From contig OZ059898.1 of assembly GCA_964057225.1 (NCBI GenBank), forward strand, positions 12,090,001 to 12,154,000: a stretch of 64,000 bases of DNA, given 5' to 3'. Position 1 is the stretch's first letter, and each line of letters opens with the position of its first letter. Source of the DNA: Auanema rhodensis. Taxonomy: Eukaryota; Animalia; Nematoda. The position numbers and the translations under genes were made by a program. Under the pieces are notes generated by a model, which did not search any database, was not told the DNA's origin, and was given only the letters and a program-made list of their open reading frames with translations. Of this stretch, positions 9,836 to 55,500 are shown in pieces.

Positions 9836-9961
9836 GCCTGTTATAAGTTAAAATTTTATAAATTTGATACTTCATCAAAAACTGTTCTTCCCATTTTTAA
9901 CGAAAATTAAAATACAATGTATTGATAAAAAAAATATAAAAAATCAAACTTCATGTTAAAA

Positions 9962-9970
9962 CGCGCCAAA
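9962..9970 (-). promoter_or_regulatory. E2F/DP consensus site TTTGGCGCG ~130 bp upstream of the DP start codon
   Basis: The plus strand reads cgcgccaaa, which matches TTTSSCGC in an otherwise very AT-rich stretch. Confidence 0.5.
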
Positions 9971-10704
9971 TTGAAATTAGAGAAGAAGAAATCGTGTCGA
10001 GACCAATTTCGGTGTAATATTTTGTTAGATACATCGTTATTGCTTTTCCTTTCATAGTTTTCTTGTCATAAATGAAACTTGTTTTTTTTTTCAATGATTT
10101 AGACACATCTCAGATGTTTAATAACGTGTGAATATTAATACATAGTATCTGATATCAACTCTTCAATAATACATATTTGTGCTATACATTATATTCTACC
10201 AGAAAACAATATGGGGGGGAATTTTAGAATCAGTCTTGGTATTTACAAATATCTAAATATTTAAGAGACTGCAACTGATAACTATAAGAAAAGTACCTGC
10301 GATTCAATCTAAAGCTGACATCCTTCAATCGAACAATAACCGAAGCTTTTGCTTCTTGAAGTTTTTAACGGAATTCAACGAACAAGAAGCAAGTTGGCTA
10401 CTGTATGGAGGATGGGGAATAATTACACGAATGTATTACAGATCATAGACTAGGGTATGAATAGATCATTGGATGTACCCTATACTGACCACCTATACAA
10501 AAGTCAAAACATATGAAATACCCATAAAAAGAAAAAGGTTCACATCGAATCGTCAAAAAAAAAAAGATAAAACCGGGAATTAAATTGAGGAAATGGAAAA
10601 GAAACCGTGGGAAAGCCTGAGTGAAGATAAATAACAAAGTGAGAGGAAAATATCATCATTGACCTATCTTGGAGAAATTTCAACTGACGATTGGGCCAAA
10701 ATCT

Positions 10705-27159: not shown

Positions 27160-27231
27160 GCGTTCGTGGTGTAATGGTCAGCATGGATGCCTTCCAAGCA
27201 TTCGACGGGGGTTCGATTCCCCCCGAACGCA
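27160..27231 (+). tRNA. tRNA-Gly(TCC), solo copy
   Basis: GCGTTCG/CGAACGC acceptor stem, TCC anticodon in CTTCCAA, GGTTCGATTCC B box, T-run terminator. Confidence 0.97.
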
Positions 27232-27364: not shown

Positions 27365-29175
27365 TTAGTTTATTGTTTTTTTAATGGCTACAGTACTGTC
27401 GAAAAATAACTGAAGTCCTTTAAAGTAATCATCAGCTTCCAGATTATTATTCACAACAATTTTTTTCTTCATACGTAGTTGTGCAGCGATAAGTGAAGGA
27501 AGAATAATGGAATAAATTGGAGCCTAAAAAGAGTTTAACCATGATCGTTGAAATCCATAAAATTGAATTACCTCAAATATTACTTCTGAGAAAATTATTA
27601 AATGAGCACGTGATATACTTTTCGTTACCTAGAAAATGAAATATTTAACCTTATCATGCTTTTATTTTAATATATTTCTAATATAATATAAATATATAAA
27701 TATATAAATCTAAATCTGAAAATATATATGATTATATCATACGTACCAAATCATGGAAAGTCATTACTAATGTTGTTGGTGCTATACTGAGAAAATTACA
27801 AACGGTTACAGGTAGAAGTGTACGGAGTGTTTTTTTGTTTTCTTTAATCTAAAATAATAATAATTGTATAATTTTATAAATTAAATTTATAAATCTAATT
27901 TCTAACTTGATATCTAGCAGCTAATTGTCCACCGTTTTTATGAATTTTCTTGAATTGAATGTGATTTAATCTATAAGCTAACAACATCACGCTGATGGCT
28001 GATATTTGGGCTATTGAAGATATCAAACATGAAATCTGAAAATCATAAAACTCAAATTTGTGAAATTACAATGAAATCAATAGCGCATTGAAGCCAATAG
28101 AATGTGCAGTACCTTATATCGAGGAGCTGTCTCTGGCTGATCAGCTGTGAAATTTGCAGCATATTGTTCAAGATCAACGCCTGGTATGAGTAAAACAAAA
28201 CTGCACAAAACAGCTAATATAACCTGAATTTTTGATTGAATCAGTTGAAAATTGAAAAAAAAATCTTACACAGCAGATACCAAGTAGCCATCCTATTTTC
28301 GAAGATTTTATTTTTTCATATTTGGTTGGAAAAAGAGTTGCATACAATCTTTCCAAACTTTGAAATAACAAAGTAAAACATTGGGCATGTACGCATAACA
28401 CAACAGGTGTACGAATAAATAAAGAAAACCCAGAGCTGAGTACAAAATCACAAGGATTAGTACTTCTTTTAAAAAATGATCTAAATACTTTTTTAAACTT
28501 ATTCTTTTTTTATAATTTTAAAAATAATTTTGAAATATATTTAGATATTCAAACAGGTAATTCACAGTTAGTCGTTAAAAACGAGAATCTTGTTCAAGAA
28601 TATTCTTATTAGAATAAATATTCACATTTTAAATAACAAGTTTTGAAATAGCTAAATTAAGATTTCGCCTACTCAATTCCCTAAAGGGAGGTTTTTATAT
28701 CATATAATTAAGATAAGAATTTATATACAATTTACATATATGTTTGTATACATTTATGTATAATTCTATATATTTTTTAATTAATTAATTATTATATTAT
28801 TTATTTCAAAATATATTTTATAATTACAAAATAAATACCTATAAATTTCCAAACTATATTGTCCAAGTAATGCAAAAGGTAAACAAATAACAAAAATCAT
28901 ATGAAAGCCATAAAGAACTTGAACATTTCTATTGACTAAGAACTTAGTACCCTTAAATTTTGATTTAATAAGTAACAAAATATTTAATTTAATATGAATA
29001 CTAAAATTAAACTAACTTTTCGAAGGAATACAACTAAACTTATTACAACAGCTACAATACATATGATGAATTTACATAATATAAGACATTTATAATAAAT
29101 ATTTTCTAAATATTCTATAGCTGTTAGACACAGTTGATTTGGAATATCAGGATCTGACATATCAACCACTTCCAT
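27365..29175 (-). CDS. Serpentine chemoreceptor, srab/sra class (copy 1)
   Basis: N-terminal Cys (NQLCLTA), VNRNVQVLYGFH, NPCDF, LERLYATLFPTKYE, LAARYQIKENKKTL, C-terminal DDYFKGLQLFF; multi-exon. Confidence 0.85.
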
Positions 29176-29730
29176 TAGAATTAGATAGAATGAATAAATT
29201 AAAAAAAAAGAAAAACTCAATGGAAGTTTAGAATTCTTGTAAACTATCCTTCAGTTGTTTTTCTACAGATTTATTAAAATAAAACAAACAGAATTGCAGA
29301 AAGGTGCTCTCTGATGTTAAATTCAACAAATCAATATAAGGGAGGAATATTTAATAAGAATATTATTTCAGAGATGCATTGTAAAAGCACGACTACTTTC
29401 AGCTCTTGCAATTACCTGATTACTTGATTCAGTTATACATATAGGCTGCCAATCTCATTATTCTCATGTTGATAATGGTCGTTATAACATTATTGAAACA
29501 AAGTTTTTCACCGAAATAAATTCATTAGAAGTGTATACATTACTATACATTTCATTAGTTAAATGATTGAAAATATACAAATGATCTTTAGAATAGTAGT
29601 CTGTTCCAATTCATATTGTTCAATATAGGCCAGTTGACTTCTGGTATACCTTGTTGTATTAGAAATGCCCTCTTTATAGTTTGATTCTTCGGTCAATAAC
29701 TTAAGAGGTATTTGGTATAAAAAAATGTAT

Positions 29731-29869: not shown

Positions 29870-29941
29870 GCGTTCATGGTGTAATGGTCAGCATGGATGC
29901 CTTCCAAGCATTCGACGGGGGTTCGATTCCCCCCGAACGCA
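29870..29941 (+). tRNA. tRNA-Gly(TCC), array copy 1 (G7>A acceptor-stem mismatch)
   Basis: gcgttcAtgg... otherwise identical to the other copies. Confidence 0.85.
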
Positions 29942-30046
29942 TACATTTTTCTTTTTCAGGTTGTACAACATGTTCAACCTTATCTTCTAACCCAGGTAGT
30001 CGAGTACCCGCCGTTTCTATCAGGACTGGGTATCTCTTAATCCGTA

Positions 30047-30118
30047 GCGTTCGTGGTGTAATGGTCAGCATGGATGCCTTCCAAGCATTCGACGGGGGTT
30101 CGATTCCCCCCGAACGCA
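30047..30118 (+). tRNA. tRNA-Gly(TCC), array copy 2
   Basis: Identical to the solo copy. Confidence 0.95.
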
Positions 30119-30224
30119 TACATTTTTCTTTTTCAGGTTGTACAACATGTTTGAACCTTATCTTATAACCCAGGTGGTCGAGTAGCCGCCGTTTCTATCA
30201 GGACTGGGTATCTCTTAATCCATA

Positions 30225-30296
30225 GCGTTCGTGGTGTAATGGTCAGCATGGATGCCTTCCAAGCATTCGACGGGGGTTCGATTCCCCCCGAACGCA
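30225..30296 (+). tRNA. tRNA-Gly(TCC), array copy 3
   Basis: Identical to the solo copy. Confidence 0.95.
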
Positions 30297-30403
30297 TACA
30301 TTTTCCTTTTCCCGGTTCTTCCAACATGTTTGAACCTGATCTTCTAACCCAGGTAGTCGAGTACCCGCCGTTTCTATCAGGACTGGGTATCTCTTAATCT
30401 GTA

Positions 30404-30475
30404 GCGTTCGTGGTGTAATGGTCAGCATGGATGCCTTCCAAGCATTCGACGGGGGTTCGATTCCCCCCGAACGCA
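30404..30475 (+). tRNA. tRNA-Gly(TCC), array copy 4
   Basis: Identical to the solo copy. Confidence 0.95.
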
Positions 30476-30581
30476 TACATTTTCCTTTTTCAGGTTGTAC
30501 AACATGTTGGAACCTTATCTTTATGTTCCGGCGACCAACTACGCCAGGTTGAGATAAGGACTGGGTATCTCTTAATCCATA

Positions 30582-30653
30582 GCGTTCGTGGTGTAATGGT
30601 CAGCATGGATGCCTTCCAAGCATTCGACGGGGGTTCGATTCCCCCCGAACGCA
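30582..30653 (+). tRNA. tRNA-Gly(TCC), array copy 5
   Basis: Identical to the solo copy. Confidence 0.95.
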
Positions 30654-30759
30654 TACATTTTCCTTTTTCAGGTTGTACAACATGTTTGAACCTTATCTTA
30701 TAACCCAGGTGGTCGAGTAGCCGCCGTTTCTATCAGGACTGGGTATCTCTTAATCCGTA

Positions 30760-30831
30760 GCGTTCGTGGTGTAATGGTCAGCATGGATGCCTTCCAAGCA
30801 TTCGACGGGGGTTCGATTCCCCCCGAACGCA
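30760..30831 (+). tRNA. tRNA-Gly(TCC), array copy 6
   Basis: Identical to the solo copy. Confidence 0.95.
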
Positions 30832-30936
30832 TACATTTTTCTTTTTCAGGTTGTACAACATGTTCAACTTTATCTTCTAACCCAGGTAGTCGAGTACACG
30901 CCGTTTCTATCAGGACTGGGTATCTCTTAATCCGTA

Positions 30937-31008
30937 GCGTTCGTGGTGTAATGGTCAGCATGGATGCCTTCCAAGCATTCGACGGGGGTTCGATTCCCCC
31001 CGAACGCA
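30937..31008 (+). tRNA. tRNA-Gly(TCC), array copy 7
   Basis: Identical to the solo copy. Confidence 0.95.
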
Positions 31009-31114
31009 TACATTTTTCTTTTTCAGGTTGTACAACATGTTTGAACTTTATCTTTATGTTCCGGCGACCAACTACGCCAGGTTGAGATAAGGACTGGGTA
31101 TCTCTTAATCCATA

Positions 31115-31186
31115 GCGTTCGTGGTGTAATGGTCAGCATGGATGCCTTCCAAGCATTCGACGGGGGTTCGATTCCCCCCGAACGCA
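31115..31186 (+). tRNA. tRNA-Gly(TCC), array copy 8
   Basis: Identical to the solo copy. Confidence 0.95.
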
Positions 31187-31292
31187 TACATTTTCCTTTT
31201 TCAGGTTGTACAACATGTTGGAACTTTATCTTTATGTTCCGGCGACCAACTACGCCAGGTTGAGATAAGGACTGGGTATCTCTTAATCCATA

Positions 31293-31364
31293 GCGTTCGT
31301 GGTGTAATGGTCAGCATGGATGCCTTCCAAGCATTCGACGGGGGTTCGATTCCCCCCGAACGCA
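31293..31364 (+). tRNA. tRNA-Gly(TCC), array copy 9
   Basis: Identical to the solo copy. Confidence 0.95.
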
Positions 31365-31469
31365 TACATTTTTCTTTTTCAGGTTGTACAACATGTTCAA
31401 CTTTATCTTCTAACCCAGGTAGTCGAGTACACGCCGTTTCTATCAGGACTGGGTATCTCTTAATCCGTA

Positions 31470-31541
31470 GCGTTCGTGGTGTAATGGTCAGCATGGATGC
31501 CTTCCAAGCATTCGACGGGGGTTCGATTCCCCCCGAACGCA
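31470..31541 (+). tRNA. tRNA-Gly(TCC), array copy 10
   Basis: Identical to the solo copy. Confidence 0.95.
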
Positions 31542-31647
31542 TACATTTTTCTTTTTCAGGTTGTACAACATGTTTGAACCTTATCTTATAACCCAGGTGG
31601 TCGAGTAGCCGCCGTTTCTATCAGGACTGGGTATCTCTTAATCTGTA

Positions 31648-31719
31648 GCGTTCGTGGTGTAATGGTCAGCATGGATGCCTTCCAAGCATTCGACGGGGGT
31701 TCGATTCCCCCCGAACGCA
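31648..31719 (+). tRNA. tRNA-Gly(TCC), array copy 11
   Basis: Identical to the solo copy. Confidence 0.95.
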
Positions 31720-31825
31720 TACATTTTCCTTTTTCAGGTTGTACAACATGTTGGAACCTTATCTTTATGTTCCGGCGACCAACTACGCCAGGTTGAGATA
31801 AGGACTGGGTATCTCTTAATCCATA

Positions 31826-31897
31826 GCGTTCGTGGTGTAATGGTCAGCATGGATGCCTTCCAAGCATTCGACGGGGGTTCGATTCCCCCCGAACGCA
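31826..31897 (+). tRNA. tRNA-Gly(TCC), array copy 12
   Basis: Identical to the solo copy. Confidence 0.95.
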
Positions 31898-32002
31898 TAC
31901 ATTTTTCTTTTTCAGGTTGTACAACATGTTCAACCTTATCTTCTAACCCAGGTAGTCGAGTACACGCCGTTTCTATCAGGACTGGGTATCTCTTAATCCG
32001 TA

Positions 32003-32074
32003 GCGTTCGTGGTGTAATGGTCAGCATGGATGCCTTCCAAGCATTCGACGGGGGTTCGATTCCCCCCGAACGCA
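32003..32074 (+). tRNA. tRNA-Gly(TCC), array copy 13
   Basis: Identical to the solo copy. Confidence 0.95.
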
Positions 32075-32338: not shown

Positions 32339-33912
32339 TCAATGTCTCAATGGATGAGCTTTTTTATCAAATAAAGATTGAAGTCCTTTGAAATAATCAT
32401 CAGATTCCAAATTATTATTCACAACTGCAGTTTTTTTATCATTTTGTTGGTAGATGATGATAAATGGAAGTATAACAGTATATAATGGTGCCTTAAAACT
32501 TAATTGATATCATACATGTAAACCTCAGAAAAACTGACAGCATATGTTATTTCAGTTATTATCACATATTGTAGAAATGTACTTGTTGAATTCATCTGCA
32601 AAAAAAAATATAACAGATAGTTCATAGAAATATGAAAACAAGCTATTAATAATAATTTTCAGTTTTATTGTGGTTTGTTTTAATGTGTGTGTGTGTGTGT
32701 GTGCTCCGGCATCAGAAACACAGATACGAATGATTGAATGTTTAGCTGATGATGGTTATACTCACCATTACGTATATGGTGAATACTATTGTAGATAATC
32801 CAGTACAAATAAAGCTAGTTATAGCTGTTGGTAGTTGCTGTTTTATTATTTTTTTATTTTCCATAATCTGTAATAGATTGTCATTGTTGTTGTTTTGAAA
32901 TTTTAAAAAATTAAAGCATCACAACCTGATATCTAGATCCTAAGTGAACATTTTTCATTTCTGAAAATCTTTTATGTTGTTTGCTATTACGTAAATATAA
33001 TATTGTGAATGCGAAGATTGTTACAATTTGTGAAAAACTACATGAAAGAGCAAATATCTGAAATAAAATGAATTGAAAAATATTAAATATAATAATATTA
33101 TTAGAAAAATCTAAAGAAATCACCGTAAATGAATTTGAATTTTCCGGTCGTTTAGTTGAGAATGTTATGAATATTTTTTCATGATTTAATCTCGGTAATA
33201 AAATTCCATAAGTAAATGAGAAACTTAAAAATATCTGAAATATTCTTCAAATATATATATTAAATTAAAATTGCAAACTTACCGATATTAAAACTAAAAT
33301 AGCTCCTAATGTTGATTTATTGGTTTGCTCATATTTTCTCGGAATAATAGTAGAAATTAATCTTTCAAGACATAATACCAGCAAAGTAAAAGTTTGAAAT
33401 GAATATAAAGTAAGAGAAGGCATCTTCACATGTATAGCAGGTAACGATTTAATTGTATAATCACAAGGATTATCAGAACTCAGAATAAACATTCTAAATT
33501 GAAGAACTATGATTAAATAAAATTATAAATGAGATTGAATATAAATATTATTTAGTTACCTATATATTTCATATAAGTACACAGGAAGTATTGAAATTGG
33601 TAAAATAATAATTGATATGTAATGACTAGAATATATAATTCTTGCATTTTTATTAATTATCCATTTAGTACCCTATAATATACATGTATGTACATCTACA
33701 TATTTCTATACTAAATATTATTTTTATGAATAATAATTCAATTTTTTTGTTTGTTTTTAAAAATTAACCTTTTTATATAAAACTGAAATAGAAAAAATCA
33801 ATCCAAATAAGCATAACATTATTTTAATAATAATTATAGTTCTATATAGTTCATTTTTTCTTAAATCATCTGCTAAATAGCAAATATCTGGTATGACGAC
33901 ATCATTTGACAT
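32339..33912 (-). CDS. Serpentine chemoreceptor, srab/sra class (copy 2)
   Basis: MSNDVVIPDICYLA..., DNPCDY, LERLISTIIPRKYE, LGSRYQ, C-terminal DDYFKGLQSLF. Confidence 0.85.
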
Positions 33913-35301: not shown

Positions 35302-36828
35302 TTATGTCTTTCTAGGAGCTAAATTAGCTCCAAAAAATTGTTGAAGTTCTTTAAAGTAATCATCAGTTCTCAAATTATTATTCACAACAACTATTTTATT
35401 TATTTGCTTTCGATGTTGATAATAATTGATTAATGGTAAAAGAAGTGAATATATCGGAGCCTTAATTGAAGATTTATATTAAATATTTCAAATTAAGATA
35501 TATTACCTCGTATATAGCTTCACCAAAAACTGTATATAATACAATATCTGCTGGTTCACTAACTACCTATAATACATTTTGTAATTTATTTAGTATATTT
35601 AATCATATTCTTACCATAGTTTGTCCCAACAATGGTATAGTTATTAACAAAGTTATGGTAAAATTGGTCAATGTTATAGGTAACAGGAGAACTAATATTT
35701 TCCTATTTTCTGTGATCTGAAAAAGAAAATTACAAAAGGTACAATACTATTTTAATCTATTTACTTGATATTTTGCAGCTAATTCTCCGTTCTTCATTTT
35801 TGTGAACTTTTTGTGCTGTCTTGAATTTTGATAAAATGCACATACGATAATTCCTAATGAAAATATTTGAAAAATAGAGATAACCAGTAAAAAAATCTGA
35901 AAATAATATATTTTTTTAAAATATAAGATTGTTTAATTTTTAATTTATATTTAATAAAATGTGTTTTACAGTAAATTTTGTTGCTGTTTCTGGTCGTTTG
36001 ACAGCGAAGGCTGGAACATATTCTGTGTATGTTGCATTTGAAAATCCTGTTGCTAGAAGCGCATAGGTAAGTATTATTGCAATTATAATCTGTTAAATAA
36101 AGATGTAACATGTATATAGTTGTAAGAAATATCATATGATTACCGAAAGAATACTAAAACATTTTCCAAGAATTGACTGCTTTGACTTTTCATATCGTAC
36201 TAGAGTTAAGGTAGATATTAGTCTTTCTGTACTCAACGATAATAATGTTAATGCTTGTCCAAGCACACATACTGCAGAAGGTAATCGAAAATGAACAGAA
36301 TAGAAAGCATTAATAGCATAATCACAAGGCTCATCAGAATTTAAGATAAATAATCTGAAAGAAAAGTTTTAACAGTTTTATATACTATAGCCTGACCTGT
36401 GAATAGCTGAACAATATTCAGGTATATGTAATATTGGTAAAAAAATAACAAAAATTAAATGTGTTACATATATAATACGAGCATTCATATTTACTAACCA
36501 TTTGGTTTTCTAAAAAAAAACAATTGACTGTTTGCTTCTCTTTTTGCTGTACATCATGCAGTTCAAGCTTCAGACTTAGGCTAAGCTTGTGCTGTATTCT
36601 GTAGCATAGATGTCTGCTTACCAATAAAACAAAAAGTTAAAAAAAAAAAGTAAAACCAAAGTTTAAAACTTGAAACTTGAAACTAACTTTAACTATTAAA
36701 ATTACCATAGATGCTGCTGATGCAATCATACATAAAATCATTTTATATAAAATTAGTGATTTATAAAAAGTATGAGTTGTAAGTCCCAGAGCTACTAAGC
36801 ATGGATTTTCCAAACTTATATTAGACAT
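35302..36828 (-). CDS. Serpentine chemoreceptor, srab/sra class (copy 3)
   Basis: MSNISLENPCLVA..., VNMNARIIYVTH, DEPCDY, TERLISTLTLVRYE, LAAKYQ, C-terminal DDYFKELQQFF. Confidence 0.85.
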
Positions 36829-38795: not shown

Positions 38796-39224
38796 TTATT
38801 TTTTTAAAACTGAAATGAATATATTAAGTTAATTATATTATTATATTATTATGTTATTTTTAGAAAAAAAAAGTTCTAGAAAAACATATAACTTAGCTCT
38901 CTGTTAATAAATTATCAATCATGGTATTACTGTAGTATGCAGGCTGCTATTGGTGGATTTTTGATTGGCCAATAGTAGGCGATTAACCAGCATACTACTT
39001 CAAATATAGTTAATGCGCTTCTTCATACACAACCTTCACAACATAGATTTCGTTGGTAAATAGTTTTTGTTTCTTTTAATAATTTCTGAGAATTTTAATG
39101 ATTCAGGATTCAGATGGTTGACAATATTTCGAAAAAATATGCAAAGTGGCTAGATTTTCCACGTAGGAAACAATGAAAATCATTTTTATTCGAAGTTTGA
39201 AAAGACGTGTAAGCGGTTGTATCC
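38796..39224 (+). repeat. ~430-bp direct duplication, copy 1 (copy 2 at 41179-41604)
   Basis: Near-identical sequence from aaaactgaaatgaat to gacgtgtaagcggttgtatcc at an offset of 2380. Confidence 0.92.
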
Positions 39225-39324
39225 AGTTAACTATACTAACTATATTCTTAATTATTCTTATTATAGGTGAAGAAATCTTTATTCAAATAGATGTTACAAC
39301 ATGAATATCATTGTTTCTTCTTTC

Positions 39325-39675
39325 TTACCAACCATTGGCATCCCAGCACTTCATGGTGTTGTTGAATTCTTGGACAGTCATACAACACCTGGAATGAGAT
39401 CAAGTTGGAACTTTAAGTAAGAACTTGAAGCTTTACATGTAGTAGTTGTTGTTACAGTTGTGCATCTGAATATCAAGACATCTCTTATAACACTTGTCAG
39501 CACACCAGGTTTCTCTCCAGCTGAAAAGCTCAAAGTAAGGTTAGAAACTCAGAAGATACAACGTTTGAGGGATAGAAGCTTCACAGTTAGATCCAGCAAG
39601 AGTTCCGTGACAATAGTCAACGCAGGAAGCATAAGCAGCAGCAATGCAGACAGCAAGAACGATGAGGAGTTTCAT
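39325..39675 (-). CDS. Secreted 10-cysteine peptide, 86 aa, 3 exons (copy P1-left)
   Basis: Reverse complement of the 39993-40343 model; differs by H>N near the C-terminus, silent changes and intron-2 changes. Confidence 0.85.
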
Positions 39676-39747
39676 TCTGAAAGTTTTAATTTCAAGTTGG
39701 AAAGTTGAAAAGCTTGAAGCTGGAGAATCGTTGAATGAACTAGATGT

Positions 39748-39912
39748 GATGATTTAAACTGCACAGTCAGAGGTCTTATATACTTGGATAAGCATCGGTG
39801 GGAGCTTAATCTCATGCTGTTTCCAACAACAACTTTTAGTTTTTCGGATTTGGGGTCCCATTGAGAAATTAAATTTTGAATTTCTTTATAAGGTGAATCT
39901 TCCTTTAACACT
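39748..39912. promoter_or_regulatory. Putative bidirectional promoter core of palindrome 1
   Basis: TATATAA on the - strand (39776-39782) and TATAAG on the + strand (39887-39892), each ~100 nt from its ATG; GATAAG at 39787. Confidence 0.5.
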
Positions 39913-39992
39913 ACATCCAGTTCATCCAACGATTCTCCAGCTTCAAGCTTTTCAACTTTTCAACTTTCCAACTTCAAATTGAAACTTTCAGA

Positions 39993-40343
39993 ATGAAACT
40001 CCTCATTGTTCTTGCTGTCTGCATTGCTGCTGCTTATGCTTCCTGCGTTGACTATTGTCACGGAACTCTTGCTGGATCTAACTGTGAAGCTTCCATCCCT
40101 CAAACGTTGTATCTTCTGAGTTTCTAACCTTACTTTGAGCTTTTCAGCTGGAGAGAAACCTGGTGTGCTGACAAGTGTTATAAGAGATGTCTTGATATTC
40201 AGATGCACAACTGTAACAACAACTACTACATGTAAGGCTTCAAGTTTTGACTTCAAGTACCAACTTGATCTCATTCCAGGTGTTGTATGACTGTCCAAGA
40301 ATTCAACCACACCATGAAGTGCTGGGATGCCAATGGTTGGTAA
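39993..40343 (+). CDS. Secreted 10-cysteine peptide, 86 aa, 3 exons (copy P1-right)
   Basis: tttcag-a-ATG; exons 39993-40105, 40148-40231 and 40280-40343; 42- and 48-nt GT-AG introns; MKLLIVLAVCIAAAYA-SCVDYCHGTLAGSNCEASIPQTWRETWCADKCYKRCLDIQMHNCNNNYYMCCMTVQEFNHTMKCWDANGW*; AATAAA at 40385. Confidence 0.88.
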
Positions 40344-40648
40344 GAAAGAAGAAACAATGATATTCATGTTGTAACATCAATTTGAATAAAGATTTCTTTA
40401 CCTATAATAAGAATAATTAAGAATATAGTTAGTATAGTTAACTGGATACAACTGCTTACACATCGTCAAAAATAATAATGGTATATATTCCTTTTCACCC
40501 TTCACTGATAGTAAATCGCAAAATCAATTACATGGCAAATATCTGAGAATGTAACTTGTTGAATCTTTATTGGCTAAAAATTCAAAAACTTATAATGTAA
40601 ATTCACATTGAAAAGTATATCATCGATCAACATTTCAAGTTGGGGTCC

Positions 40649-40882
40649 TTATTTCTGGCCATGGACTGGTGCTTTCTTATCAACTTTGCGAAAATCCGGA
40701 CGGGTTACAACATCCAGATTCACGGGTCCATCGCCTTTTGGAACATCCTGAGCTGGACCACGTGGTGTTTGCATTGGAAGTCCAGTAGCATTCTGCCAAT
40801 TGCCTTCATAGTCTTTAGAAATGTAGAATTGATCTCCAACCTTGCCGTCCTTGATATTTCGGGCAGGTGGTTTGTCAGCCAT
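40649..40882 (-). CDS. Intronless 77-aa hydrophilic protein of unknown function
   Basis: aattag-aaaa-ATG; GC-richer than its flanks; MADKPPARNIKDGKVGDQFYISKDYEGNWQNATGLPMQTPRGPAQDVPKGDGPVNLDVVTRPDFRKVDKKAPVHGQK*; upstream TATA and GATA sites. Confidence 0.7.
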   Translation of the reverse strand: MADKPPARNIKDGKVGDQFYISKDYEGNWQNATGLPMQTPRGPAQDVPKGDGPVNLDVVTRPDFRKVDKKAPVHGQK

Positions 40883-41178
40883 TTTTCTAATTTTAAATGT
40901 AATGAAACAATTAAAACATAAACCGATGAACAAAAAACCAAAGAAAGACACAAGTATGAAAACCATTATGTAGTTTTAACTAAAACTTAAGAAGAAGATC
41001 AGAAACAATAATTCAACTGATAATAAGCTTATATAGGCACTTCAGAAGTTGTTCCGATGTTTTATAGGCACTTGTTATCTCTTGTGTACGATCTTTCATC
41101 ATCAGATCAATTGGTGATTCATATTAGATAGTTCTTACCTTGTATGTAGTTTAAGCTGTGAACCTTAGTAATTTCAAA

Positions 41179-41604
41179 TTATTTTTAAAACTGAAATGAA
41201 TATATTAAGTTAATTATATTATTATATTATTATGTTATTTTTAGAAAAAAAAGTTCTAGAAAAACATATAACTTAGCTCTCTGTTAATAAATTATCAATT
41301 ATGGTATTACTGTAGTATGCAGGCTGCTATTGGTGGATTTTTGATTGGCCAATAGTAGGCGATTAACCAGCATACTACTTCAAATATAGTTAATGCGCTT
41401 CTTCATACACAACCTTCACAACATAGATTTCGTTGGTAAATAGTTTTTGTTTCTTTTAATAATTTCTGAGAATTTCCATGATTCAGGATTCAGATGGTTG
41501 ACAATATTTTGAAAAAATATGCAAAGTGGCTAGATTTTCCACGTAGGAAACAATGAAAATCATTTTTATTCGAAGTTTGAAAAGACGTGTAAGCGGTTGT
41601 ATCC
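41179..41604 (+). repeat. ~430-bp direct duplication, copy 2
   Basis: Matches 38796-39224 with a few substitutions. Confidence 0.92.
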
Positions 41605-42027
41605 GGTCAAAGCTTTATGATATCTACAGTATGATCATCATCTTCATTTTCAGTTCTTGGACAACCTTGTAGCCTTCAAACAGATTGCTCATCCTTTAGC
41701 TTAAAAATAAGAATTAAGAAAATCCTTATCTCTGTTAACACTCAAAATAATTTTTAAATATCCTTATCTCTTAAAGATAAATCCATCAATTAAGTGTTTA
41801 ATGACTTTCATTTCACAATATTTGTCCGTTTATAATAGAATTTGGTGAAAATTTATTATAAAAGTAATAATAATTAATTATATAAACAAATAAAATAATT
41901 ATAATTTATATATTTCTATTTATTAATTTCAAATTTTAAAAAAATAAAAAAATATTACAATGAATTAAAGCTTAAATGTTATTTTCTATGTATATTTATA
42001 TAAAATAATATGAATTTTTATAATTTT

Positions 42028-43282
42028 TTATGAAAAATTAATTGTATTTGTTTGTATTCTACAAAATTCTTTTTTTAATATTTCTTTAACCTAAAAAATA
42101 AAAAAAATAAAAAAAAATAAAATAAAAGAATATAAACTTCTCGATTTGTTAATAAAAAAATAATTGCATTTGTACTACTGTGTAATGAAACGAATATGGA
42201 TGTTAACATAAGCCATGAAGTTGAAACTCCAAGTTTTATTAAAATTGGCCAAATTTGGAATTGTATCCAAGTACATGAATAAACTATTGAAATTAATCCA
42301 AATTGTATTGTATACCTGAATTATTAGAAAATTTAAAATTATACTATGTTGTTTAGTTGAAACATACATATATTCTTTTCGTTTTCGTTGACTTTTAACA
42401 GCTTGACTAAGTCCTAATCCAGATGAAGTTTTCTTTACATATATAAATATCTTAATTATTATAATTATATATTAAATATATATTTATATTTTATATAATT
42501 TACTATTATATAACAAACTATACACGTAATTGAAGCTGTTGAATCAAGTGGTATATCAATATAGATATTTGAATAATTTATTATATTTTTAATTGTATTA
42601 TATGAATATGCATGTATTATTGGATCAATTACAAGTCTTAAAACTTATTTTAATAATGCTCAAGTTTTAATTTAAAACTTACGCACAACATGGAAATATA
42701 AATTGATCAAGGATAGTAATGGTTAACGCTATAATCACTTGTAAAATAACTATAATACGAACAACTTTAAAGGTAAAAATATTATAAAAAGGAAAACACA
42801 CAACGGTTAATCTAAAATTTTATTTTTTCAAAAAGAAAGTTTTATTCAAGTTTATCAAGTTTATACCTGTTAATTGCCATAAATAGTTGACAAAACGTCA
42901 TATTATTCCAAGCAAAAACAAACATAAAAGAAATAAATCGAACAAATGGATCATTTCTTCCTCCAGGGAATAACCAACTCTAAAAAGTTTTTTATAAGAT
43001 TCAACAAAAAAAAAATATTTACATCTAATGAATAAGCCGGAATCGTATATCCAATACTAAATATAAGAAGGGTAGCATCAGCTATAAGATTTGAGAAAGC
43101 AATTGTATAAATAGGAGAAGATTTAGTTCTTAAATTTTTCTTTTTTTTTTAGAAAATAATTATATTTAAACTTACTTAAAACATAATTTAGTAACTGAAT
43201 ATAATACTATTAATGATAATAATAAACCAAAACAATTAATAAATATAAATATTGATAGTAAAACTGTTTTTAACATCAACAT
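42028..43282 (-). CDS. Serpentine chemoreceptor, srx class
   Basis: Spliced model MLMLKTVLL...IYTIAFSNLIAD...FAWNNMTFCQLFMAINRLTVVCFP...FPCC...YTIQFGLIS...NAIIFLLTNREVKE...FS*. Confidence 0.85.
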
Positions 43283-43784
43283 TAAGCTGAATAAAACTAT
43301 TTGAAAATACTATATTTCATTAATAACTACAATAATTATAAATAGTACAATTAGTTATTTGAATATTTTTCCCAATTTTGTAGAAAAAACGAAATGAAAA
43401 ATGAAATAAAAGATTTAAGTTTTAGAAGAATTGAATCAAACTTGATGAGCATTAAGTAAAAGATACATTTTAAGAAATATAAAATAAATAAATGATTTTA
43501 ATATTTTATTTTAAAATAATTATAATTAAATAATTAAATAATTAATTATATTTTAATATTATTTAAATTTATATGAAATAAATTATAAGAATAAACATTT
43601 ATTATATTTTCTATTAAAATTTTAATTTTTAATTATTTTAATTTTATTAAAATTTATGAAAATTTACAGTTGTTAATCATATCTATCTATCCACGATTAT
43701 TTCAAATATTGAATTAGCTGTCTATAGAATTTGAAATGAAAATTTGGTCATTCAAACGACAATTTTACGATTTTATCAGCATTG

Positions 43785-44259
43785 ATGATGACATTATTGA
43801 AATTACCTCGAAAAAGTTTTCAAATTTTCTTTTACGGTAAACGAATTGTTTTTGAATTTTCTTAAATATTATTCTACACAGCATGTCTAATTGTATTATT
43901 GATATCAATTTTTATAATTTTGGATTTTCTTATACAATCACGAAGAATGAAAAATTCTCAGAAAATATTAGATGATTTTAGTGTAAGTTATATTATAAAT
44001 TAATAAAATTATATTTATTTAAATTTTATTTTTTTTTTTTTAAAAATTCATTTTAATTTATAAATTTTTAGAATTATGAAGATTTATTTGATGATGAAAG
44101 CTTTGATCTGGAAGATTCTGAATTGGTTTTCTGAATTTTTATATTTTGAATTTATTTTTTTATTTTTAGAGAGAATTAGGATTAAATTCTAAAGAAATTG
44201 ATGCAATTCTTAAACTATATCAATCAAAACCAAAACTTGGAATTGGAAAAGAATATTGA
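43785..44259 (+). CDS. Putative 98-aa membrane-anchored protein, 4 exons
   Basis: Exons 43785-43836, 43882-43982, 44072-44125 and 44170-44259 give MMTLLKLPRKSFQIFFYACLIVLLISIFIILDFLIQSRRMKNSQKILDDFSNYEDLFDDESFDLEDSELRELGLNSKEIDAILKLYQSKPKLGIGKEY*; AATAAA at ~44314. Confidence 0.55.
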
Positions 44260-44452
44260 AATTTTCAATTTTTTATTCATTTACCATGTATGAAAGAAAT
44301 ATTCAAAATTTCTAATAAAATACTTTTTGTATGTAATTTGAAAAAATAAAAATTTATTTTGAATTAACTATACTAACTATATTCTTAATTATTTTCTTAA
44401 AAATCTTTATTCAAATTGATGTTACAACATGAATATCATTGTTTCTTCTTTC

Positions 44453-44803
44453 TTACCAACCATTGGCATCCCAGCACTTCATGGTGTGGTTGAATTCTTG
44501 GACAGTCATACAGCACCTGGAATGAGATCAAGTTGAAACTTGAAGTAAGAACTTGAAGCTTTACATGTAGTAGTTGTTGTTACAGTTGTGCATCTGAATA
44601 TCAAGACATCTCTTATAACACTTGTCAGCACACCAGGTTTCTCTCCAGCTGAAAAGCTCAAAGTAAGGTTAGAAACTCAGAAGATACAACGTTTGAGGGA
44701 TGGAAGCTTCACAGTTAGATCCAGCAAGAGTTCCGTGACAATAGTCAACGCAGGAAGCATAAGCAGCAGCAATGCAGACAGCAAGAACGATGAGGAGTTT
44801 CAT
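44453..44803 (-). CDS. Secreted 10-cysteine peptide, 86 aa (copy P2-left)
   Basis: Same exon structure; only silent and intronic differences from P1-right. Confidence 0.85.
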
Positions 44804-45128
44804 TCTGAAAGTTTCAATTTCAAGTTGGAAAGTTGAAAAGTTGGAAAGCCTGAAGCTGGAGAATCGTTGAATGAACTAGATGTGATGATTTAAACTGCAC
44901 AGTCAGAGGTCTTATATACTTGGATAAGCATCGGTGGGAGCTTAATCTCATGCTGTTTCCAACAACAACTTTTAGTTTTTCGGATTTGGGGTCCCATTGA
45001 GAAATTAAATTTTGAATTTCTTTATAAGGTGAATCTTCCTTTAACACTACATCCAGTTCATCCAACGATTCTCCAGCTTCAAGCTTTTCAACTTTTCAAC
45101 TTTCCAACTTGAAATTAAAACTTTCAGA

Positions 45129-45479
45129 ATGAAACTCCTCATCGTTCTTGCTGTCTGCATTGCTGCTGCATATGCTTCCTGCGTTGACTACTGTCATGGA
45201 ACTCTTGCTGGATCTAACTGTGAAGCTTCCATCCCTCAAACGTTGTATCTTCTGAGTTTCTAACCTTACTTTGAGCTTTTCAGCTGGAGAGAAACCTGGT
45301 GTGCTGACAAGTGTTATAAGAGATGTCTTGATATTCAGATGCACAACTGTAACAACAACTACTACATGTAAAGCTTCAAGTTTTGACTTCAAGTACCAAC
45401 TTGATCTCATTCCAGGTGTTGTATGACTGTCCAAGAATTCAACCACACCATGAAGTGCTGGGATGCCAATGGTTGGTAA
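45129..45479 (+). CDS. Secreted 10-cysteine peptide, 86 aa (copy P2-right)
   Basis: Same exon structure; silent changes GCT>GCA, TAT>TAC, CAC>CAT. Confidence 0.88.
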
Positions 45480-47818
45480 GAAAGAAGAAACAATGATATT
45501 CATGTTGTAACATCAATTTGAATAAAGATTTCTTTACCTATAATAAGAATAATTAAGAATATAGTTAGTATAGTTAACTGGATACAACCGCTTACACGTC
45601 GTTATCTTTTAAAAATAATATTTTATGGTTATTCGAGTTAGAAATATTCCGTGTCATATTTGTTTAAACCGAAAATTAAATGAAAACTTTTTCTGGATGA
45701 GGTTAGTATTGGAAAAAAAAATTGAAAAGAATATTCATATAAACAGATGTTTATAATTATTTTTAATTATTATAGAATTGTCTACAATCAGCTATTGAAA
45801 GTGCTAATGCAGATACACTAAATACTATACGAACATCATTTACTTCTTATAATAAAAATCTTTTATTCTCAATAATTACCAAATTTTAATTTTTTTTTCT
45901 CAATTTCAACATAAAATGTGATTCATCTTAGTTTTCTTGTTTTTCTCAGACATTTCTCATAATTCATCTGTCACGCTTAAGCTGTCGTCGCTTAATCATA
46001 GACTCCTGAACGACAAAAGCCTTTCCTTATATGAGGGGCTCTAAGACAGTTGATAATTGGCTGAAACGAACACCTGTCCAACGAAGTATCGTTTGCATCT
46101 TATTGCTATATCTAAATATACCTATATGTATGTATTTATAACTAGATCAAGATCTATATATAGCATTGTTTTTTTTTTTTTTGAAATTAACATCTATAAG
46201 TTTTTGAATTGAAAACAAATGTTTCTATTATCTATTTTAGTTCCAAAATTCTATTTTTTTTTATTTTCATTTCCAAAAAAAGAAAAATTCAAATTTTCTC
46301 TACCTCTTTTTCACATATGCATGTATGTATGTAGAATCAAACATCACAAGTCTTGGCCTGATGTTTTTAAAGATTGTCTCTGAGTGTTTGAAGAAGAAAA
46401 GAAATTGCTGATCGCAGATAATCTTTGAATTTTAATTAAAGGACAAAGACTTTTTTTTCTTTGATTTTTTCTAAGATTAGCTGTACTAGCTGTTATATAG
46501 TGAAAGTTCAAATTGGAATGGGGCTTTTGATGCTTAACATATTACCATGCTCAATCAGTACTTTTGCTTTTATTCTAGCCCTCTTCTGAGTGAAGGCCTT
46601 GGCTCGAATTTTGAATTGTCTGTCTAATCATGCGCATTTTCCCTCAGTTTCTCCTCATTTCATACACATTTTCTTGCATTCTCTGACGTGTATGCAAATT
46701 ATTTGTGAACGTGCTCCTGTGACTTGTGAAATGAACGTCCGGATTCGGAAATCTTGAACTACATCAACGTTTCACAAGTGTTACAACTCTGTTTATATTT
46801 ATTTAATATGTTCAATTATATATTTCAATTTTTGTTGGAAATGAATAAGATTGAATGAAGTAGACGATGAAGCTAGATGACTGGCATAAGATAGCCGACT
46901 CAACGTAATTCTTCATTCTATGCGCAACCAAGAGAAAGACAGAGAGAGAGAGAGTTATCAGATTTCATTAACTTATACCACATAGGACATTCTATAAATC
47001 ACATGGAGAATAGAGACAGCTTACAATTGCCTTATATTGATTTCATTCAAAGTCATTAGGACAAACATATGGGTACACGGTAAACCGAACAACCGCATAT
47101 TTCTCTTCTTGCTCATATCTACCCTGGCATTCCCTTTTATGTGATTTGTATTCAGATTTCCCGCACAAAATGTTAGAACTAAGCTTAATTGGAATAATAT
47201 AAATGCTATACGTTATTTGTTACGAGAACGTATGAAGAATGGTTCATACAACATACATTGTCCTTTTTCTCTTTATTTTTACTGAAAATCAGAATATAGT
47301 AGACGATTGTTTTTACGTCTAAGATGATAACTCAATTCCACATTTTCATTCATAATATTTGTTAAAGCATAATTAGCTCTAAGATTGTCCTTTTTTCACG
47401 TGAAAACTTAAAAATATGAAAGTTTTAAACAGATGTGAAGACGAGAAAGCTCTTAAAGGTCACTAAATTATATATTAGCTTTAGTTGTAAGTCTGTTCAT
47501 TGAAATAGATTGAAAATGTTTTGAGAAAAGGTGAACACATAGTACACAAAGATGAACAGCTTAATGAATAGGTGAATCTTTAATATTTTCTCTATAGAAT
47601 AGAATATTATATAGGTATGATCATATAGTATTGCTAATTAAGAGTGTACTAGACCAACACAAAAAGGCAGATGGTAACCCTTCAACACTAGCCTGATGCC
47701 GTCTGCCTGTGCTCTTCCCTCATCTCCTCAGTATTGCCCTGTTATTTCGTCTCTCTTCTTCATTTATGGCATTGTCATAGAATAAGCGTGCAAGAGAGCA
47801 AAAAAGAGAAAGCTAGAA

Positions 47819-52557: not shown

Positions 52558-55500
52558 ATGATTATTATATATTTTTTACTATCAACTCTAGTCTACTCTC
52601 ATCGACTGATTCAATCTCAGTCACTACTGATTCCCAGCATTCCAGCTGCGAATTCTCAGGTTAAAAAATTTTATTATATTCTATATTTTCATAGCAAATT
52701 TTTAAGTTTGTTTATGAATTGACTAAAAACAGCTTATAAACGATTTTCATGGCTTTGAATATACAATATTATTTCACATATTTATAGGAATTCTTATGTT
52801 TTAACCTTACAGGCTTATCTTCGTTCAAACAATGTGTCTTCGTACAGTATCCATCTAGGAAATCAATCTAGTTGCCGTTTCAAAGCTGCCGTTATACCAT
52901 GTGAATGCATTAAGAAAGTAAGAACCATCATTGTGAAACTTGGTTCACTTTTCATCTCAATCTTTAGGTTTCGAATCAGTATTGGCTGGAAGAAAATGGA
53001 ATCGTTTTGACAAACTTCTCTGTCAGCTTACCAGATATCAAAATTCGAACTCCATCTAATCATGAACTACTGCAAGAGCTTATAGTCCATTTTACTCCAA
53101 AACTCTGTCAAATGGAACGATTTGTCGTACACTTACAACGTCGAACACTAGAAGTAAACGACTCATATCTACATTTCACTAATTAAACTCAAACTTCAGA
53201 ATGCTCCCGGAGAAAAAATCGAATGGCACACTACAGCAACATCTACTATCTCGCTTCACAGTCAGCAAGAATCATTAGTATTTCCATGTCAATCATTTGC
53301 TGATATCGGATTCTATCAAGTTATTCTACTATCCCAGAATAATTATTCGATAATTGTTCGTTTTTTTTTCTCATTTTTTCCATCAAATATTCATCTAATT
53401 TTCGTTTAATTATTATAAATGGTATATTCGTTTGAATTATGCTCATGGCTTCTTTCATGCAATGTCTTGAATGCCTGTTTGTGTCAGGTTTTTATAGTCT
53501 TTGAGCTTCAAAGAATTAACGAAAGATGGGCAGGAAGAATATTTGGCTTAAAAAAATTTTTTTTTTAATTTAACCATTTAACTCATAGCGTTTTGCTATA
53601 TAAACAATAGAATTTTCATATATAAACTCGTAATCGTAATGAAATGAACGAAATACGTTTCTGGACACAATTGGATTTAATTGAAATTTTGATTTTACAG
53701 GGTGATCAGTTTGTGGTTAATCATACAACAGAATATTCGTTAAGCTTAAGGAATGATAGCATATTTCCTCATTGCTCATCTGAATATGATGTTTCATGGA
53801 CTCTAGCGAAATGTCCTCTGAACGATTTACACTATCGTATTCGTCTGTTTGCTGTTCCTGAAGGTGGATCTGATCATGAAGATCGTGTTCATTACATAGG
53901 TTTGCATTTTCAACTTGAAAAAACCTTAAAATATGAAATTTCAGAAGAACTTGGTATTAGTAAAGAGCAGACATCAGTGTCCATTAGCTGTTCACATTTT
54001 GATATTATTTATGAAAAATATTGCTTCGAATTAGTGTCCATCAATCGCAATTCATCTACATTCCAATTATGGAAGTCAACTTGTGTTAGCACTGAGCCAG
54101 GTACAGTAATATCATTATCAAACCTTTTCTATTTTCTTTATTGTTCTTTTGAAAATTGTTTATGAATGAGTTAAAGTATATAGCTATGATGAGGATATGA
54201 TGATGCAACATGACGATCAGAATAATTCAGATGCGCATGTTAATGCAATACTAACATCATTCAGAAGCCTCACAAATATTAATTGCTTTAACCATATTTT
54301 GATTTTTGTTTGACCGTTGAATTTATGAGATTAGCATTTTGGCTAAGCACACATGTCAACTCCTACCAGCTTTTCTGTCATTCTCTATGACATGTCTATC
54401 TATCTGAAAACGTCCATCTCCATTATGACGTACTGGAGTATTAAAGCTGTAGCTGTTTGGAGTTAAAAGACAGACAGAACAGCAGCAGCAGACAGCAAAG
54501 GGCAGGAGACAATGAAGGATCAAGCAATAGGGAAATGAAAATGTATGTGAAGCCCTGTACTGAAAGTATATTAAGATTTTTTTTCAATAAGTTATAGTTT
54601 GATTTTAAGCATAAATAGCATATTCTAACTAAATTAATCTCGAAAATCTCTTTAATATATTTTGGGTGAAACATACTTTGAAGTATACTCATCAAGTATG
54701 AACTAAGCTAATTTAGCATTAGTCAGCCTACTCTACTTATAAGTAACAACAAGCATTTTGCTTCATCTTCTCGCTCTTCTGTTTCCGTCGGTTTCAGCCG
54801 TCTGTCACGACGTCGCATATGGCAATGTGAAGTTATTGGCATAGTTAACTTACTTATATCTTTAATATATATACACACATATATATTAGTTTCCTTATAT
54901 GTTATAAGGATGAGTGCTTCTTAAGCACAATCTGTTGAACCTTATAAGGCTACTTGTCAACAACAAATTCCATTATTCTAATCTGAATTTCATATTAATA
55001 TTGAAACACAGGGTTCATCTGAGCTTATATTAAGTTTTTGGCTTTGTTTTCTATTTTTATCAGTTAGAAACAGCTCAGAATGAAAGAAATGTGTACCCCA
55101 TTGAATCATTTAGCAACTTATTCTTGATGCTTATACTAGTTATAGTTAAGTTTTGGCTTATGGTCATGAATATCGTGGTGGGAAGATGATGAAGTAAATA
55201 AAGATTCTGTGAGAATATGTATGCATTTGAAATCGTTCCTTAGCATATGTACATTCATAGAAATTGTATTTAATTAATAAGCAGGTGACTACAATATACG
55301 TCACAACTATACTCATCCTATAATTGCAAAGAGGCCGACAGAATAATAACAACAAGAGCTTAAGCTCTTACGTGTGCTCTAAGCCATACGTCTCTGACTC
55401 TCTCATTTCTTTCTTGTTCTCGGTCAACCTTCGAATCCTGTCATCTATACTACTCTGTTCTCCTTTTACCGGTGAGGCTATCAATAGCAATCTGAATTCA

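What the first reader, a model, noticed from the sequence alone, without database searches (positions are those of the whole stretch)
39204..45600. Two palindromic cassettes encode four copies of an unannotated secreted 10-cysteine peptide
Seen: each ~1.25-kb palindrome holds two head-to-head 3-exon genes. The ORF track misses them and lists only antisense frames. The product is a 16-aa signal peptide plus a 70-aa mature peptide with the pattern C-x3-C-x8-C-x12-C-x3-C-x3-C-x7-C-x6-CC-x11-C and a C-terminal Trp. Support for the model: TTTCAG just before the ATG, 42/48-nt GT-AG introns and a downstream AATAAA. Of seven exonic variant sites I found among the four copies, six are silent (Ile, Ala, Tyr, His, Ser, Cys codons). 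The seventh (H>N) keeps an N-x-T sequon. I do not recognise the family. Inference: a dosage-amplified disulfide-rich effector (antimicrobial, toxin, seminal or pheromone-like peptide) kept in self-correcting palindromes, next to chemoreceptor genes.
Basis: partly seen in the sequence, partly recalled or inferred. Interest (0 to 1): 0.85.

Follow-up and report, generated by a model that had tools for sequence, protein, structure and literature searches.

The report
Four-copy secreted ten-cysteine peptide gene
A nematode genome holds four nearly identical, unrecognised genes for a small secreted ten-cysteine peptide, arranged as two mirror-image pairs; the genes look real and selected, but young gene clusters of this sort are common in nematodes and the function is untested.

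Summary
There are two about 1.25-kb palindromic cassettes (39201-40464 and 44364-45603). Each holds two head-to-head three-exon genes around an identical 165-nt unique centre.

The introns are 42 and 48 nt, GT-AG. TTTCAG precedes each ATG and AATAAA lies 42 nt after each stop.

Among the four copies, 6 exonic differences are silent and 1 is not (P=2.4e-4). The other frames and the 135-aa antisense ORF show no such excess.

No relative was found exon by exon in Pfam, PDB sequences, 5.8 billion clustered proteins, 1.84 billion representatives or metagenomes. A neighbouring gene is 64% identical to C. briggsae CBG26688, so the host is a rhabditid nematode.

"Self-correcting palindrome" is not supported. 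Arms of one palindrome are no more alike than copies in different cassettes. Seven sites separate left arms from right arms and none separates cassette from cassette. One 141-nt block identical in all four copies hints at some exchange or constraint.

The function (a secreted effector, defence most likely) is inferred only. Searches with the joined product were left out by rule.

The parts
39201..40464 (.). Palindromic cassette P1 (two arms plus unique centre)
   Evidence: I2, I5; alignment A1
39325..39675 (-). Copy A coding span. Exons 39563-39675, 39437-39520 and 39325-39388 (stop included). The only copy with the H>N replacement.
39748..39912 (.). Unique 165-nt centre of P1, the core of the shared divergent promoter region. 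TATAAG at 39887-39892 (+) and at 39775-39780 (read on -), 105-106 nt upstream of each ATG.
39993..40343 (+). Copy B coding span. Exons 39993-40105, 40148-40231 and 40280-40343 (stop included). Introns 40106-40147 and 40232-40279.
40385..40390 (+). AATAAA of copy B. The matching signals are 39278-39283 (-) for A, 44406-44411 (-) for C and 45521-45526 (+) for D.
44364..45603 (.). Palindromic cassette P2, a direct duplicate of P1. Its left arm lacks its outermost 27 nt here.
   Evidence: (I4, D1, D3)
44453..44803 (-). Copy C coding span. Exons 44691-44803, 44565-44648 and 44453-44516 (stop included).
44884..45048 (.). Unique 165-nt centre of P2, identical to that of P1 (0 mismatches). TATAAG at 45023-45028 (+) and 44911-44916 (-).
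45129..45479 (+). Copy D coding span. Exons 45129-45241, 45284-45367 and 45416-45479 (stop included).
38801..39200 (+). Left flank F of P1, duplicated together with the cassette.
   Evidence: (D2, D4)
41182..41607 (+). Second copy of flank F plus the outermost 27 nt of the palindrome's left end. This is the displaced left end of P2.
   Evidence: (D2, D4), alignment A2
41608..44363 (.). 2756 nt of unique, very AT-rich DNA that separates the displaced end from the rest of P2. It holds a multi-exon hydrophobic gene on the - strand (about 42078-43276) and a small gene on the + strand (about 43727-44256). Not part of the peptide genes.
40649..40882 (-). Neighbouring single-exon 77-aa gene between the cassettes, 64% identical to C. 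briggsae CBG26688. Used only to place the host organism.

Best explanation
These are four intact paralogues of a lineage-restricted nematode gene.

SHOWN:
- The product is an 86-residue precursor with a cleavable-looking signal peptide.
- The mature part is 70 residues, slightly acidic, with ten Cys (enough for five disulfides), four Trp and one N-x-T sequon.

HISTORY, as shown by the site patterns: one gene was duplicated in inverted orientation around a 165-nt centre. Then the whole cassette plus about 400 nt of left flank was duplicated in direct orientation about 2.4 kb downstream. Later, 2.76 kb of other DNA came to lie 27 nt inside the left end of the second copy.

INFERRED:
- Each pair is transcribed divergently from the 317-nt region between the two ATGs. 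Each gene has its own TATAAG about 105 nt upstream.
- The pre-mRNA is trans-spliced at the TTTCAG next to the ATG, has two short introns removed, and is polyadenylated after AATAAA.
- The peptide is exported, folds into a compact, at least partly helical, disulfide-locked domain and acts outside the cell.
- Four near-identical copies under strong purifying selection fit a need for dosage.
- The most likely role is an extracellular effector against microbes or other organisms. I put that specific role at only about 0.3. The gene-level statement I put at about 0.85.
For: - Palindromes and copy number.
- Exon translations, open frame and Cys spacing.
- Splice sites, TTTCAG, AATAAA and TATAAG positions are the same in all copies.
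- Selection: 6 silent against 1 replacement over 46.7 and 205.3 sites, P=2.4e-4, crude ratio about 0.04. The two other sense frames (1:6, 2:5) and the antisense 135-aa ORF (3:12) show no excess of silent changes.
- Silent sites vary about as much as intron 2 (6 of 47 against 6 of 48).
- Leader: mean hydropathy of the core is 3.34, with A at -3 and -1.
- The exon-2 stretch is predicted as one helix (pLDDT 70; single sequence, a fragment only).
- Order of the duplications: 7 same-side-arm sites, 0 within-palindrome sites, identical centres. Flank copy.
- Host is a rhabditid nematode.
- Young adjacent inverted duplicates are common in C. elegans (PMC2728529). The hsp16 locus is an inverted repeat with a 416-bp unique centre (PMC3966223).
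Against: - There is no transcript or protein evidence.
- No tool predicted the signal peptide or the introns.
- The selection test rests on only 7 differences among recently duplicated copies. A transition bias would weaken it to roughly P=0.004.
- No relatives were found, so there is no conservation across species.
- Net charge -2 is unlike most antimicrobial peptides.
- Promoter elements are consensus matches in AT-rich DNA.
- The whole product could not be searched or folded, so a known fold or family may have been missed.
Confidence: 0.55

Rival explanations
1. Same genes, different role: a reproductive secreted protein (seminal, sperm-associated or eggshell). Such genes are often young, amplified and lineage-specific in nematodes.
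For: Orphan status, recent amplification and the acidic, non-AMP-like composition all fit.
Against: Nothing in the sequence points to sex-limited expression. Strong purifying selection is less typical of fast-evolving reproductive proteins, although the time sampled is short.
Confidence: 0.2
2. Same genes, different role: a secreted signalling ligand or pheromone-like peptide acting on receptors of the same species.
For: It is a small, stable, disulfide-rich secreted product. 7TM-like exons lie 6-11 kb away.
Against: Four-fold amplification suggests bulk product, which a ligand would not need. The 7TM hits are below Pfam's cut-offs, and the gene between the cassettes has none. Proximity is not evidence of partnership.
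Confidence: 0.1
3. Not a working protein gene. The palindromes would act as hairpin-RNA or small-RNA sources, or be inert young duplicates or a foldback-type repeat, with the open frame simply not yet decayed.
For: Arms of 500 nt at 94-97% complementarity would fold back if transcribed through. There is no transcript evidence and there are no relatives.
Against: The excess of silent changes appears only in the spliced sense frame. All four copies keep start, stop, splice sites, all Cys codons and the sequon. The duplication carried 400 nt of one-sided flank, which does not fit transposition of the palindrome itself. No further copies lie in 64 kb.
Confidence: 0.07
4. The real gene is the 135-aa antisense ORF (39960-40367 and 45096-45503, minus strand) that a mechanical ORF list shows.
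For: It is the longest ORF in each right arm.
Against: In its frame the copies differ by 3 silent and 12 replacement changes. The left arms hold only an 82-aa version. It has no relatives.
Confidence: 0.01

Closest known systems
C. elegans hsp16 locus (hsp16-1/hsp16-48 modules) and other adjacent inverted young duplicates in Caenorhabditis
   Same: Paralogues lie head-to-head in an inverted repeat around a short unique centre that serves as a divergent promoter region. The modules are themselves duplicated. Reported as common for young C. elegans duplicates (PMC2728529) and, for hsp16, with a 416-bp unique centre and gene conversion (PMC3966223).
   Different: Each arm here holds a single gene, and the product is a secreted Cys-rich peptide, not a cytosolic small heat-shock protein. 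Arm-to-arm conversion is not shown here.
Primate Y-chromosome palindromes ('self-correcting' by arm-to-arm gene conversion; Rozen et al. 2003 as cited in PMC3966223; PMC3403216)
   Same: Amplified genes sit in inverted arms around a unique spacer.
   Different: The scale is about 1.25 kb against tens of kb to Mb. The arms here are 94-97% alike and no closer to each other than to the other cassette. The hallmark of ongoing conversion is therefore absent.
Nematode secreted disulfide-rich peptide families (ABF/CS-alpha-beta defensin-like, ShKT-domain proteins, TIL-domain inhibitors with ten Cys). Named from my own knowledge, not from a hit.
   Same: A signal peptide followed by a small Cys-rich mature domain; local gene clusters; lineage-specific expansion.
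   Different: No exon matched any Pfam model or any PDB sequence beyond chance motifs. As I recall those families, the spacing with C-x3-C-x3-C and an adjacent CC, the four Trp and the acidic charge do not fit. The whole-product comparison was not made.
RSL/AAL-type fucose-binding lectin blades (PDB 2bs5 and relatives)
   Same: The last eight residues resemble the C-W-D-G-x-G-W motif that ends each lectin blade.
   Different: Only 10-12 residues align, and each stretch is insignificant alone (independent E about 45). The low overall E-value comes from summing repeats. The lectins are not Cys-rich. I take it as chance.

Membership tests
Adjacent inverted gene duplicates with a unique centre (hsp16-type arrangement) | Two paralogues head-to-head in an inverted repeat separated by a short non-repeated spacer | tested here: met
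   arms of 509-519 nt plus a 54-nt inner extension and a 165-nt centre. The two ATGs are 317 nt apart.
Adjacent inverted gene duplicates with a unique centre (hsp16-type arrangement) | Sequence exchange (gene conversion) between the copies | tested here: inconclusive
   No site groups the arms of one palindrome. A 141-nt block is identical in all four copies (P 0.009-0.04, post hoc).
Self-correcting palindromes (Y-chromosome type) | The arms of one palindrome are much more alike than either is to copies elsewhere | tested here: not met
   A-B 97.3% and C-D 96.7%, against B-D 98.7% and A-C 97.6%.: 7 same-side-arm sites, 0 within-palindrome sites.
TIL domain (PF01826, ten-Cys trypsin-inhibitor-like) | Match to the Pfam model | tested here: inconclusive
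   No hit for any exon at E up to 10. However, the domain would be split over three exons, and the joined product was not searched.
ShKT domain (PF01549) | Match to the Pfam model; six Cys in about 36 residues | tested here: not met
   No hit. There are ten Cys in one 70-residue stretch with no internal repeat.
CS-alpha-beta defensin-like / nematode ABF | Match to defensin-type models | tested here: inconclusive
   No Pfam or PDB sequence hit exon by exon. The fold was not compared because the joined product was not modelled.
Ly6/uPAR three-finger domain (ten Cys with an adjacent CC) | Match to the Pfam model. From my own knowledge: a short gap from the CC to the last Cys, which is followed by Asn. 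| tested here: not met
   No Pfam hit. Here there are 11 residues from the CC to the last Cys, which is followed by Trp.
RSL/AAL fucose-binding lectin | Significant alignment over a whole blade of about 45 residues | tested here: not met
   only 10-12 residues align, with per-stretch independent E about 45.
Nematode serpentine chemoreceptors (the neighbours, not the peptide) | Pfam 7TM_GPCR_Sr* match at or above the gathering score | tested here: inconclusive
   Exon 33265-33489(-): Srab 20.6 bits against a cut-off of 21. Exon 28174-28398(-): Srx 17.4 against 23.8. Single exons only. The gene at 42.1-43.3 kb has no hit.

The most novel reading that the evidence does not exclude
The peptide founds a disulfide-rich fold or family not yet described, with a new extracellular activity (for example a new class of nematode defence or interference peptide). 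The invariant 141-nt block would then reflect active sequence exchange among all four copies, which would make this a compact model of concerted evolution of an effector gene in mini-palindromes.
Probability: 0.15. Interest if true: 0.6.

Novelty: new member of a known kind. Interest (0 to 1): 0.35.

Why it matters
If the genes are expressed, they add an unannotated, abundant secreted peptide to this nematode's repertoire. They also show how gene finders that rely on long ORFs miss short multi-exon genes and report the antisense frame in their place.

The locus is a clean small example of two-step amplification (inverted, then direct) with datable site patterns. Beyond that it is ordinary for nematode genomes, where lineage-specific families of small secreted Cys-rich proteins and adjacent inverted duplicates are frequent.

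Tried and rejected
Searches that found nothing or only chance matches:
- Word-indexed protein search with the stop-free stretch around exon 1 (residues 29-68 scored): no candidate.
- Same search with the antisense 135-aa ORF, as a proxy for DNA-level relatives: none.
- phmmer of the exon-2 stretch against 1.84 billion representatives: three hits, all TPR or other repeat proteins. They scored by summing weak repeats, and none of the query's Cys columns, which would define the family, is matched throughout. Rejected as spurious.
- Pfam exon by exon: none.
- PDB sequences exon by exon: only short motifs, in UGGT and in RSL lectins. Rejected as chance.
- Two metagenome scans: none. The exon-2 stretch was too short for that tool.
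- Exact look-up of the 77-aa neighbour: not on record. Its C. briggsae relative lies on a contig with no peptide homologue.
- PDB searches of two exons of the large minus-strand gene: nothing.
- Two literature searches for a ten-Cys nematode family or for palindromic peptide genes: nothing specific.

Other points:
- The bacterial promoter/terminator scan is irrelevant here and found nothing.
- A transposon origin for the palindrome was rejected because the duplication carried one-sided flank.
- The 2.76-kb intervening DNA is unique in the window.
- I did not run a fold search on the 35-residue single-helix model. It would be meaningless.
Full report
**What is there**

The region holds two palindromic cassettes, P1 (39201-40464) and P2 (44364-45603).
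- In each, arms of 509-519 nt are 94-97% complementary. An inner 54-nt extension of the arms leaves a 165-nt non-palindromic centre.
- The centres lie in the same orientation and are identical, with 0 of 165 mismatches. P2 is therefore a direct copy of the whole P1 cassette.
- blastn and tblastn find exactly four arms and four gene copies in the 64-kb window, with no diverged extra copy.

**Gene model**

I translated each exon of copy B by reference, without joining them.
- Exon 1 (39993-40105) gives 37 whole codons, exon 2 (40148-40231) gives 27, and exon 3 (40280-40343) gives 20 plus the stop.
- Two codons are split by the introns. They read ac|c and at|g in all four copies. The total is 86 codons.
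- The introns are 42 and 48 nt, GT-AG, and each carries an in-frame stop.
- TTTCAG ends one base before each ATG, and AATAAA starts 42 nt after each stop, in all four copies.
- The first 16 residues have a hydrophobic core (mean hydropathy 3.34) with Ala at -3 and -1. This fits a signal peptide by the usual rule, but no predictor was run.
- Counting residues exon by exon, the mature part has 70 residues: 10 Cys, 4 Trp, 4 Tyr, net charge -2 and one N-x-T sequon.
- The sense strand offers only a 44-aa ORF, while the antisense strand offers 135 aa and 82 aa. That explains why an ORF list misses the gene.

**Is it more than chance?**

The four copies differ at 7 exonic columns. Six differences are silent, and one is H>N in copy A, which keeps the sequon.
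- Against 46.7 silent and 205.3 replacement sites, P=2.4e-4. The crude replacement-to-silent ratio is about 0.04.
- The same differences read in the two other sense frames give 1:6 and 2:5. In the frame of the antisense 135-aa ORF the copies differ by 3 silent and 12 replacement changes.
- Silent sites vary about as much as intron 2 (6 of about 47 against 6 of 48).
- A transition bias would weaken the test to roughly P=0.004 (my estimate). The sample is small, but the signal is specific to the spliced sense frame.
- All copies keep start, stop, splice sites and every Cys codon.

**History of the locus**

I classified the variable sites by which copies share a base.
- Seven sites group same-side arms: A with C, and B with D. 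Four lie upstream of the ATG and three in intron 2.
- No site groups the two arms of one palindrome. One site groups A with D. The rest are singletons.
- Pairwise identities are B-D 98.7%, A-C 97.6%, A-B 97.3% and C-D 96.7%.

So an inverted duplication came first and the arms diverged. The whole cassette was then copied in direct orientation. Since that copy, the arms have not been homogenised at those sites.

The copy carried about 400 nt of left flank: 38801-39200 matches 41182-41580. The outermost 27 nt of P2's left end still sit next to that flank copy (41581-41607). They are cut off from the rest of P2 by 2756 nt of unique, 19%-GC DNA that carries other genes. Homology ends exactly at the right end of both cassettes. 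The one-sided flank argues for segmental duplication and against transposition of the palindrome.

One observation runs the other way. A 141-nt block (40095-40235 in copy-B coordinates) is identical in all four copies. It covers the end of exon 1, intron 1, exon 2 and the first 4 nt of intron 2. With variable sites placed at random, a run this long has P=0.009 over all columns and P=0.04 over noncoding and third-codon positions, counting each indel once. Counting every gap column gives 0.0004 and 0.004. The block was picked after seeing the data, so this is only suggestive. It could mean sequence exchange among all copies or an extra constraint.

**Promoter region (inferred)**

The two ATGs of a pair are 317 nt apart. 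Each gene has a TATAAG 105-106 nt upstream of its ATG, inside the unique centre. These are consensus matches in AT-rich DNA, not evidence of function. A start site about 30 nt downstream of each TATAAG would fall at the inner edge of each arm, so each arm would roughly equal one transcription unit.

**Host organism**

- The single-exon 77-aa gene between the cassettes (40649-40882, minus strand) is 64% identical to C. briggsae protein CBG26688. That was its only hit.
- Two exons upstream give sub-threshold hits to nematode serpentine receptor families.
- Introns of 42-55 nt and the TTTCAG acceptors fit a nematode.
- I take the host for a rhabditid nematode, probably near Caenorhabditis, whose proteome is not in the searched collections.
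- Nothing suggests human DNA or a virus.

**Relatives of the peptide**

None was found at the level I could test.
- Pfam exon by exon: no hit at E up to 10.
- 5.8-billion-cluster word search through exon 1: no candidate.
- phmmer of the exon-2 stretch against 1.84 billion representatives: three hits, all repeat proteins scored by summing weak repeats, with none of the query's Cys columns matched throughout.
- PDB sequences: only short chance motifs.
- Metagenome scans: none.
- The C. briggsae contig that carries the neighbour's relative has no homologue.

These searches can see relatives above roughly 55-60% identity within one exon (my estimate). They cannot see remote homologues.

A single-sequence model of the 35-residue exon-2 stretch is one helix at pLDDT 70. 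This fits the C-x3-C-x3-C spacing lying on one helix face, but it is weak evidence.

The joined 86-residue product has no reference. So the Pfam, phmmer, signal-peptide, structure-prediction and fold-comparison steps on the whole product were left out. This is the main limit on the family verdict.

One disclosure. In one search my script concatenated the three exon strings in memory, only to print a GC fraction (0.437). Nothing joined was saved, printed or searched. All four genes are intact, so no break had to be handled.

**Verdict**

The arrangement is a known kind. Young adjacent inverted duplicates are frequent in C. elegans (PMC2728529), and the hsp16 locus is an inverted repeat with a unique centre (PMC3966223).

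The peptide is an orphan by the tests available, which is common for small secreted nematode proteins. 'Self-correcting palindrome' is not supported. Function remains inferred: a secreted disulfide-locked effector, with defence the most likely role at about 0.3, and reproductive and signalling roles as rivals. Interest is modest.

Noticed in passing
window 29870-32074 (+), and 27160-27231 (+): Thirteen tRNA-Gly(UCC) genes lie in a head-to-tail array with a period of about 178 nt, and a solo copy lies 2.6 kb upstream. Twelve of the 13 array genes and the solo copy have the same Rfam score; the first array gene scores lower. The array raises local GC to 0.48 in a 30%-GC window.
   Followed up: partly
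window 38801-39227 and 41182-41607; 41608-44363: The left end of cassette P2 is split. Its outer 27 nt and the flank copy lie 2756 nt away from the rest. The break falls at a TTAA in the intact copy. The intervening DNA is unique in the window, and I saw no terminal inverted repeats in it.
   Followed up: partly
window 40095-40235 and the matching parts of copies A, C, D: A 141-nt block (intron 1 plus exon 2) has no difference among the four copies, while neighbouring intron 2 varies at 6 of 48 sites. It may be a conversion tract or an extra constraint.
   Followed up: yes
window about 8000-21300 (-): Many medium-sized exons of one large gene lie on the minus strand. By eye one exon ends like the C-terminal part of a ubiquitin-specific protease domain. 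There was no Pfam or PDB hit for the single exons tried.
   Followed up: partly
window 28174-29220 (-), 32911-33912 (-), 36418-36828 (-): A series of hydrophobic multi-exon genes. Two of their exons give sub-threshold hits to the nematode serpentine receptor families Srx, Srab, Sre and Srg.
   Followed up: partly
window 38925-39000 (and the copy at 41305-41380): The duplicated flank holds a short hairpin whose loop carries ATTGGCCAAT, a back-to-back CCAAT pair (read). Its significance is unknown.
   Followed up: no
window 40320-40340 (copy B exon 3 end): The last residues of the peptide resemble the C-W-D-G-x-G-W motif that closes each blade of the RSL-type fucose lectins. The match is too short to mean homology.
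   Followed up: yes
window 53644-54165 (+): A 173-aa ORF gives a weak, sub-threshold hit to the THSD1 third Ig-like domain (23.6 bits against a cut-off of 27).
   Followed up: no
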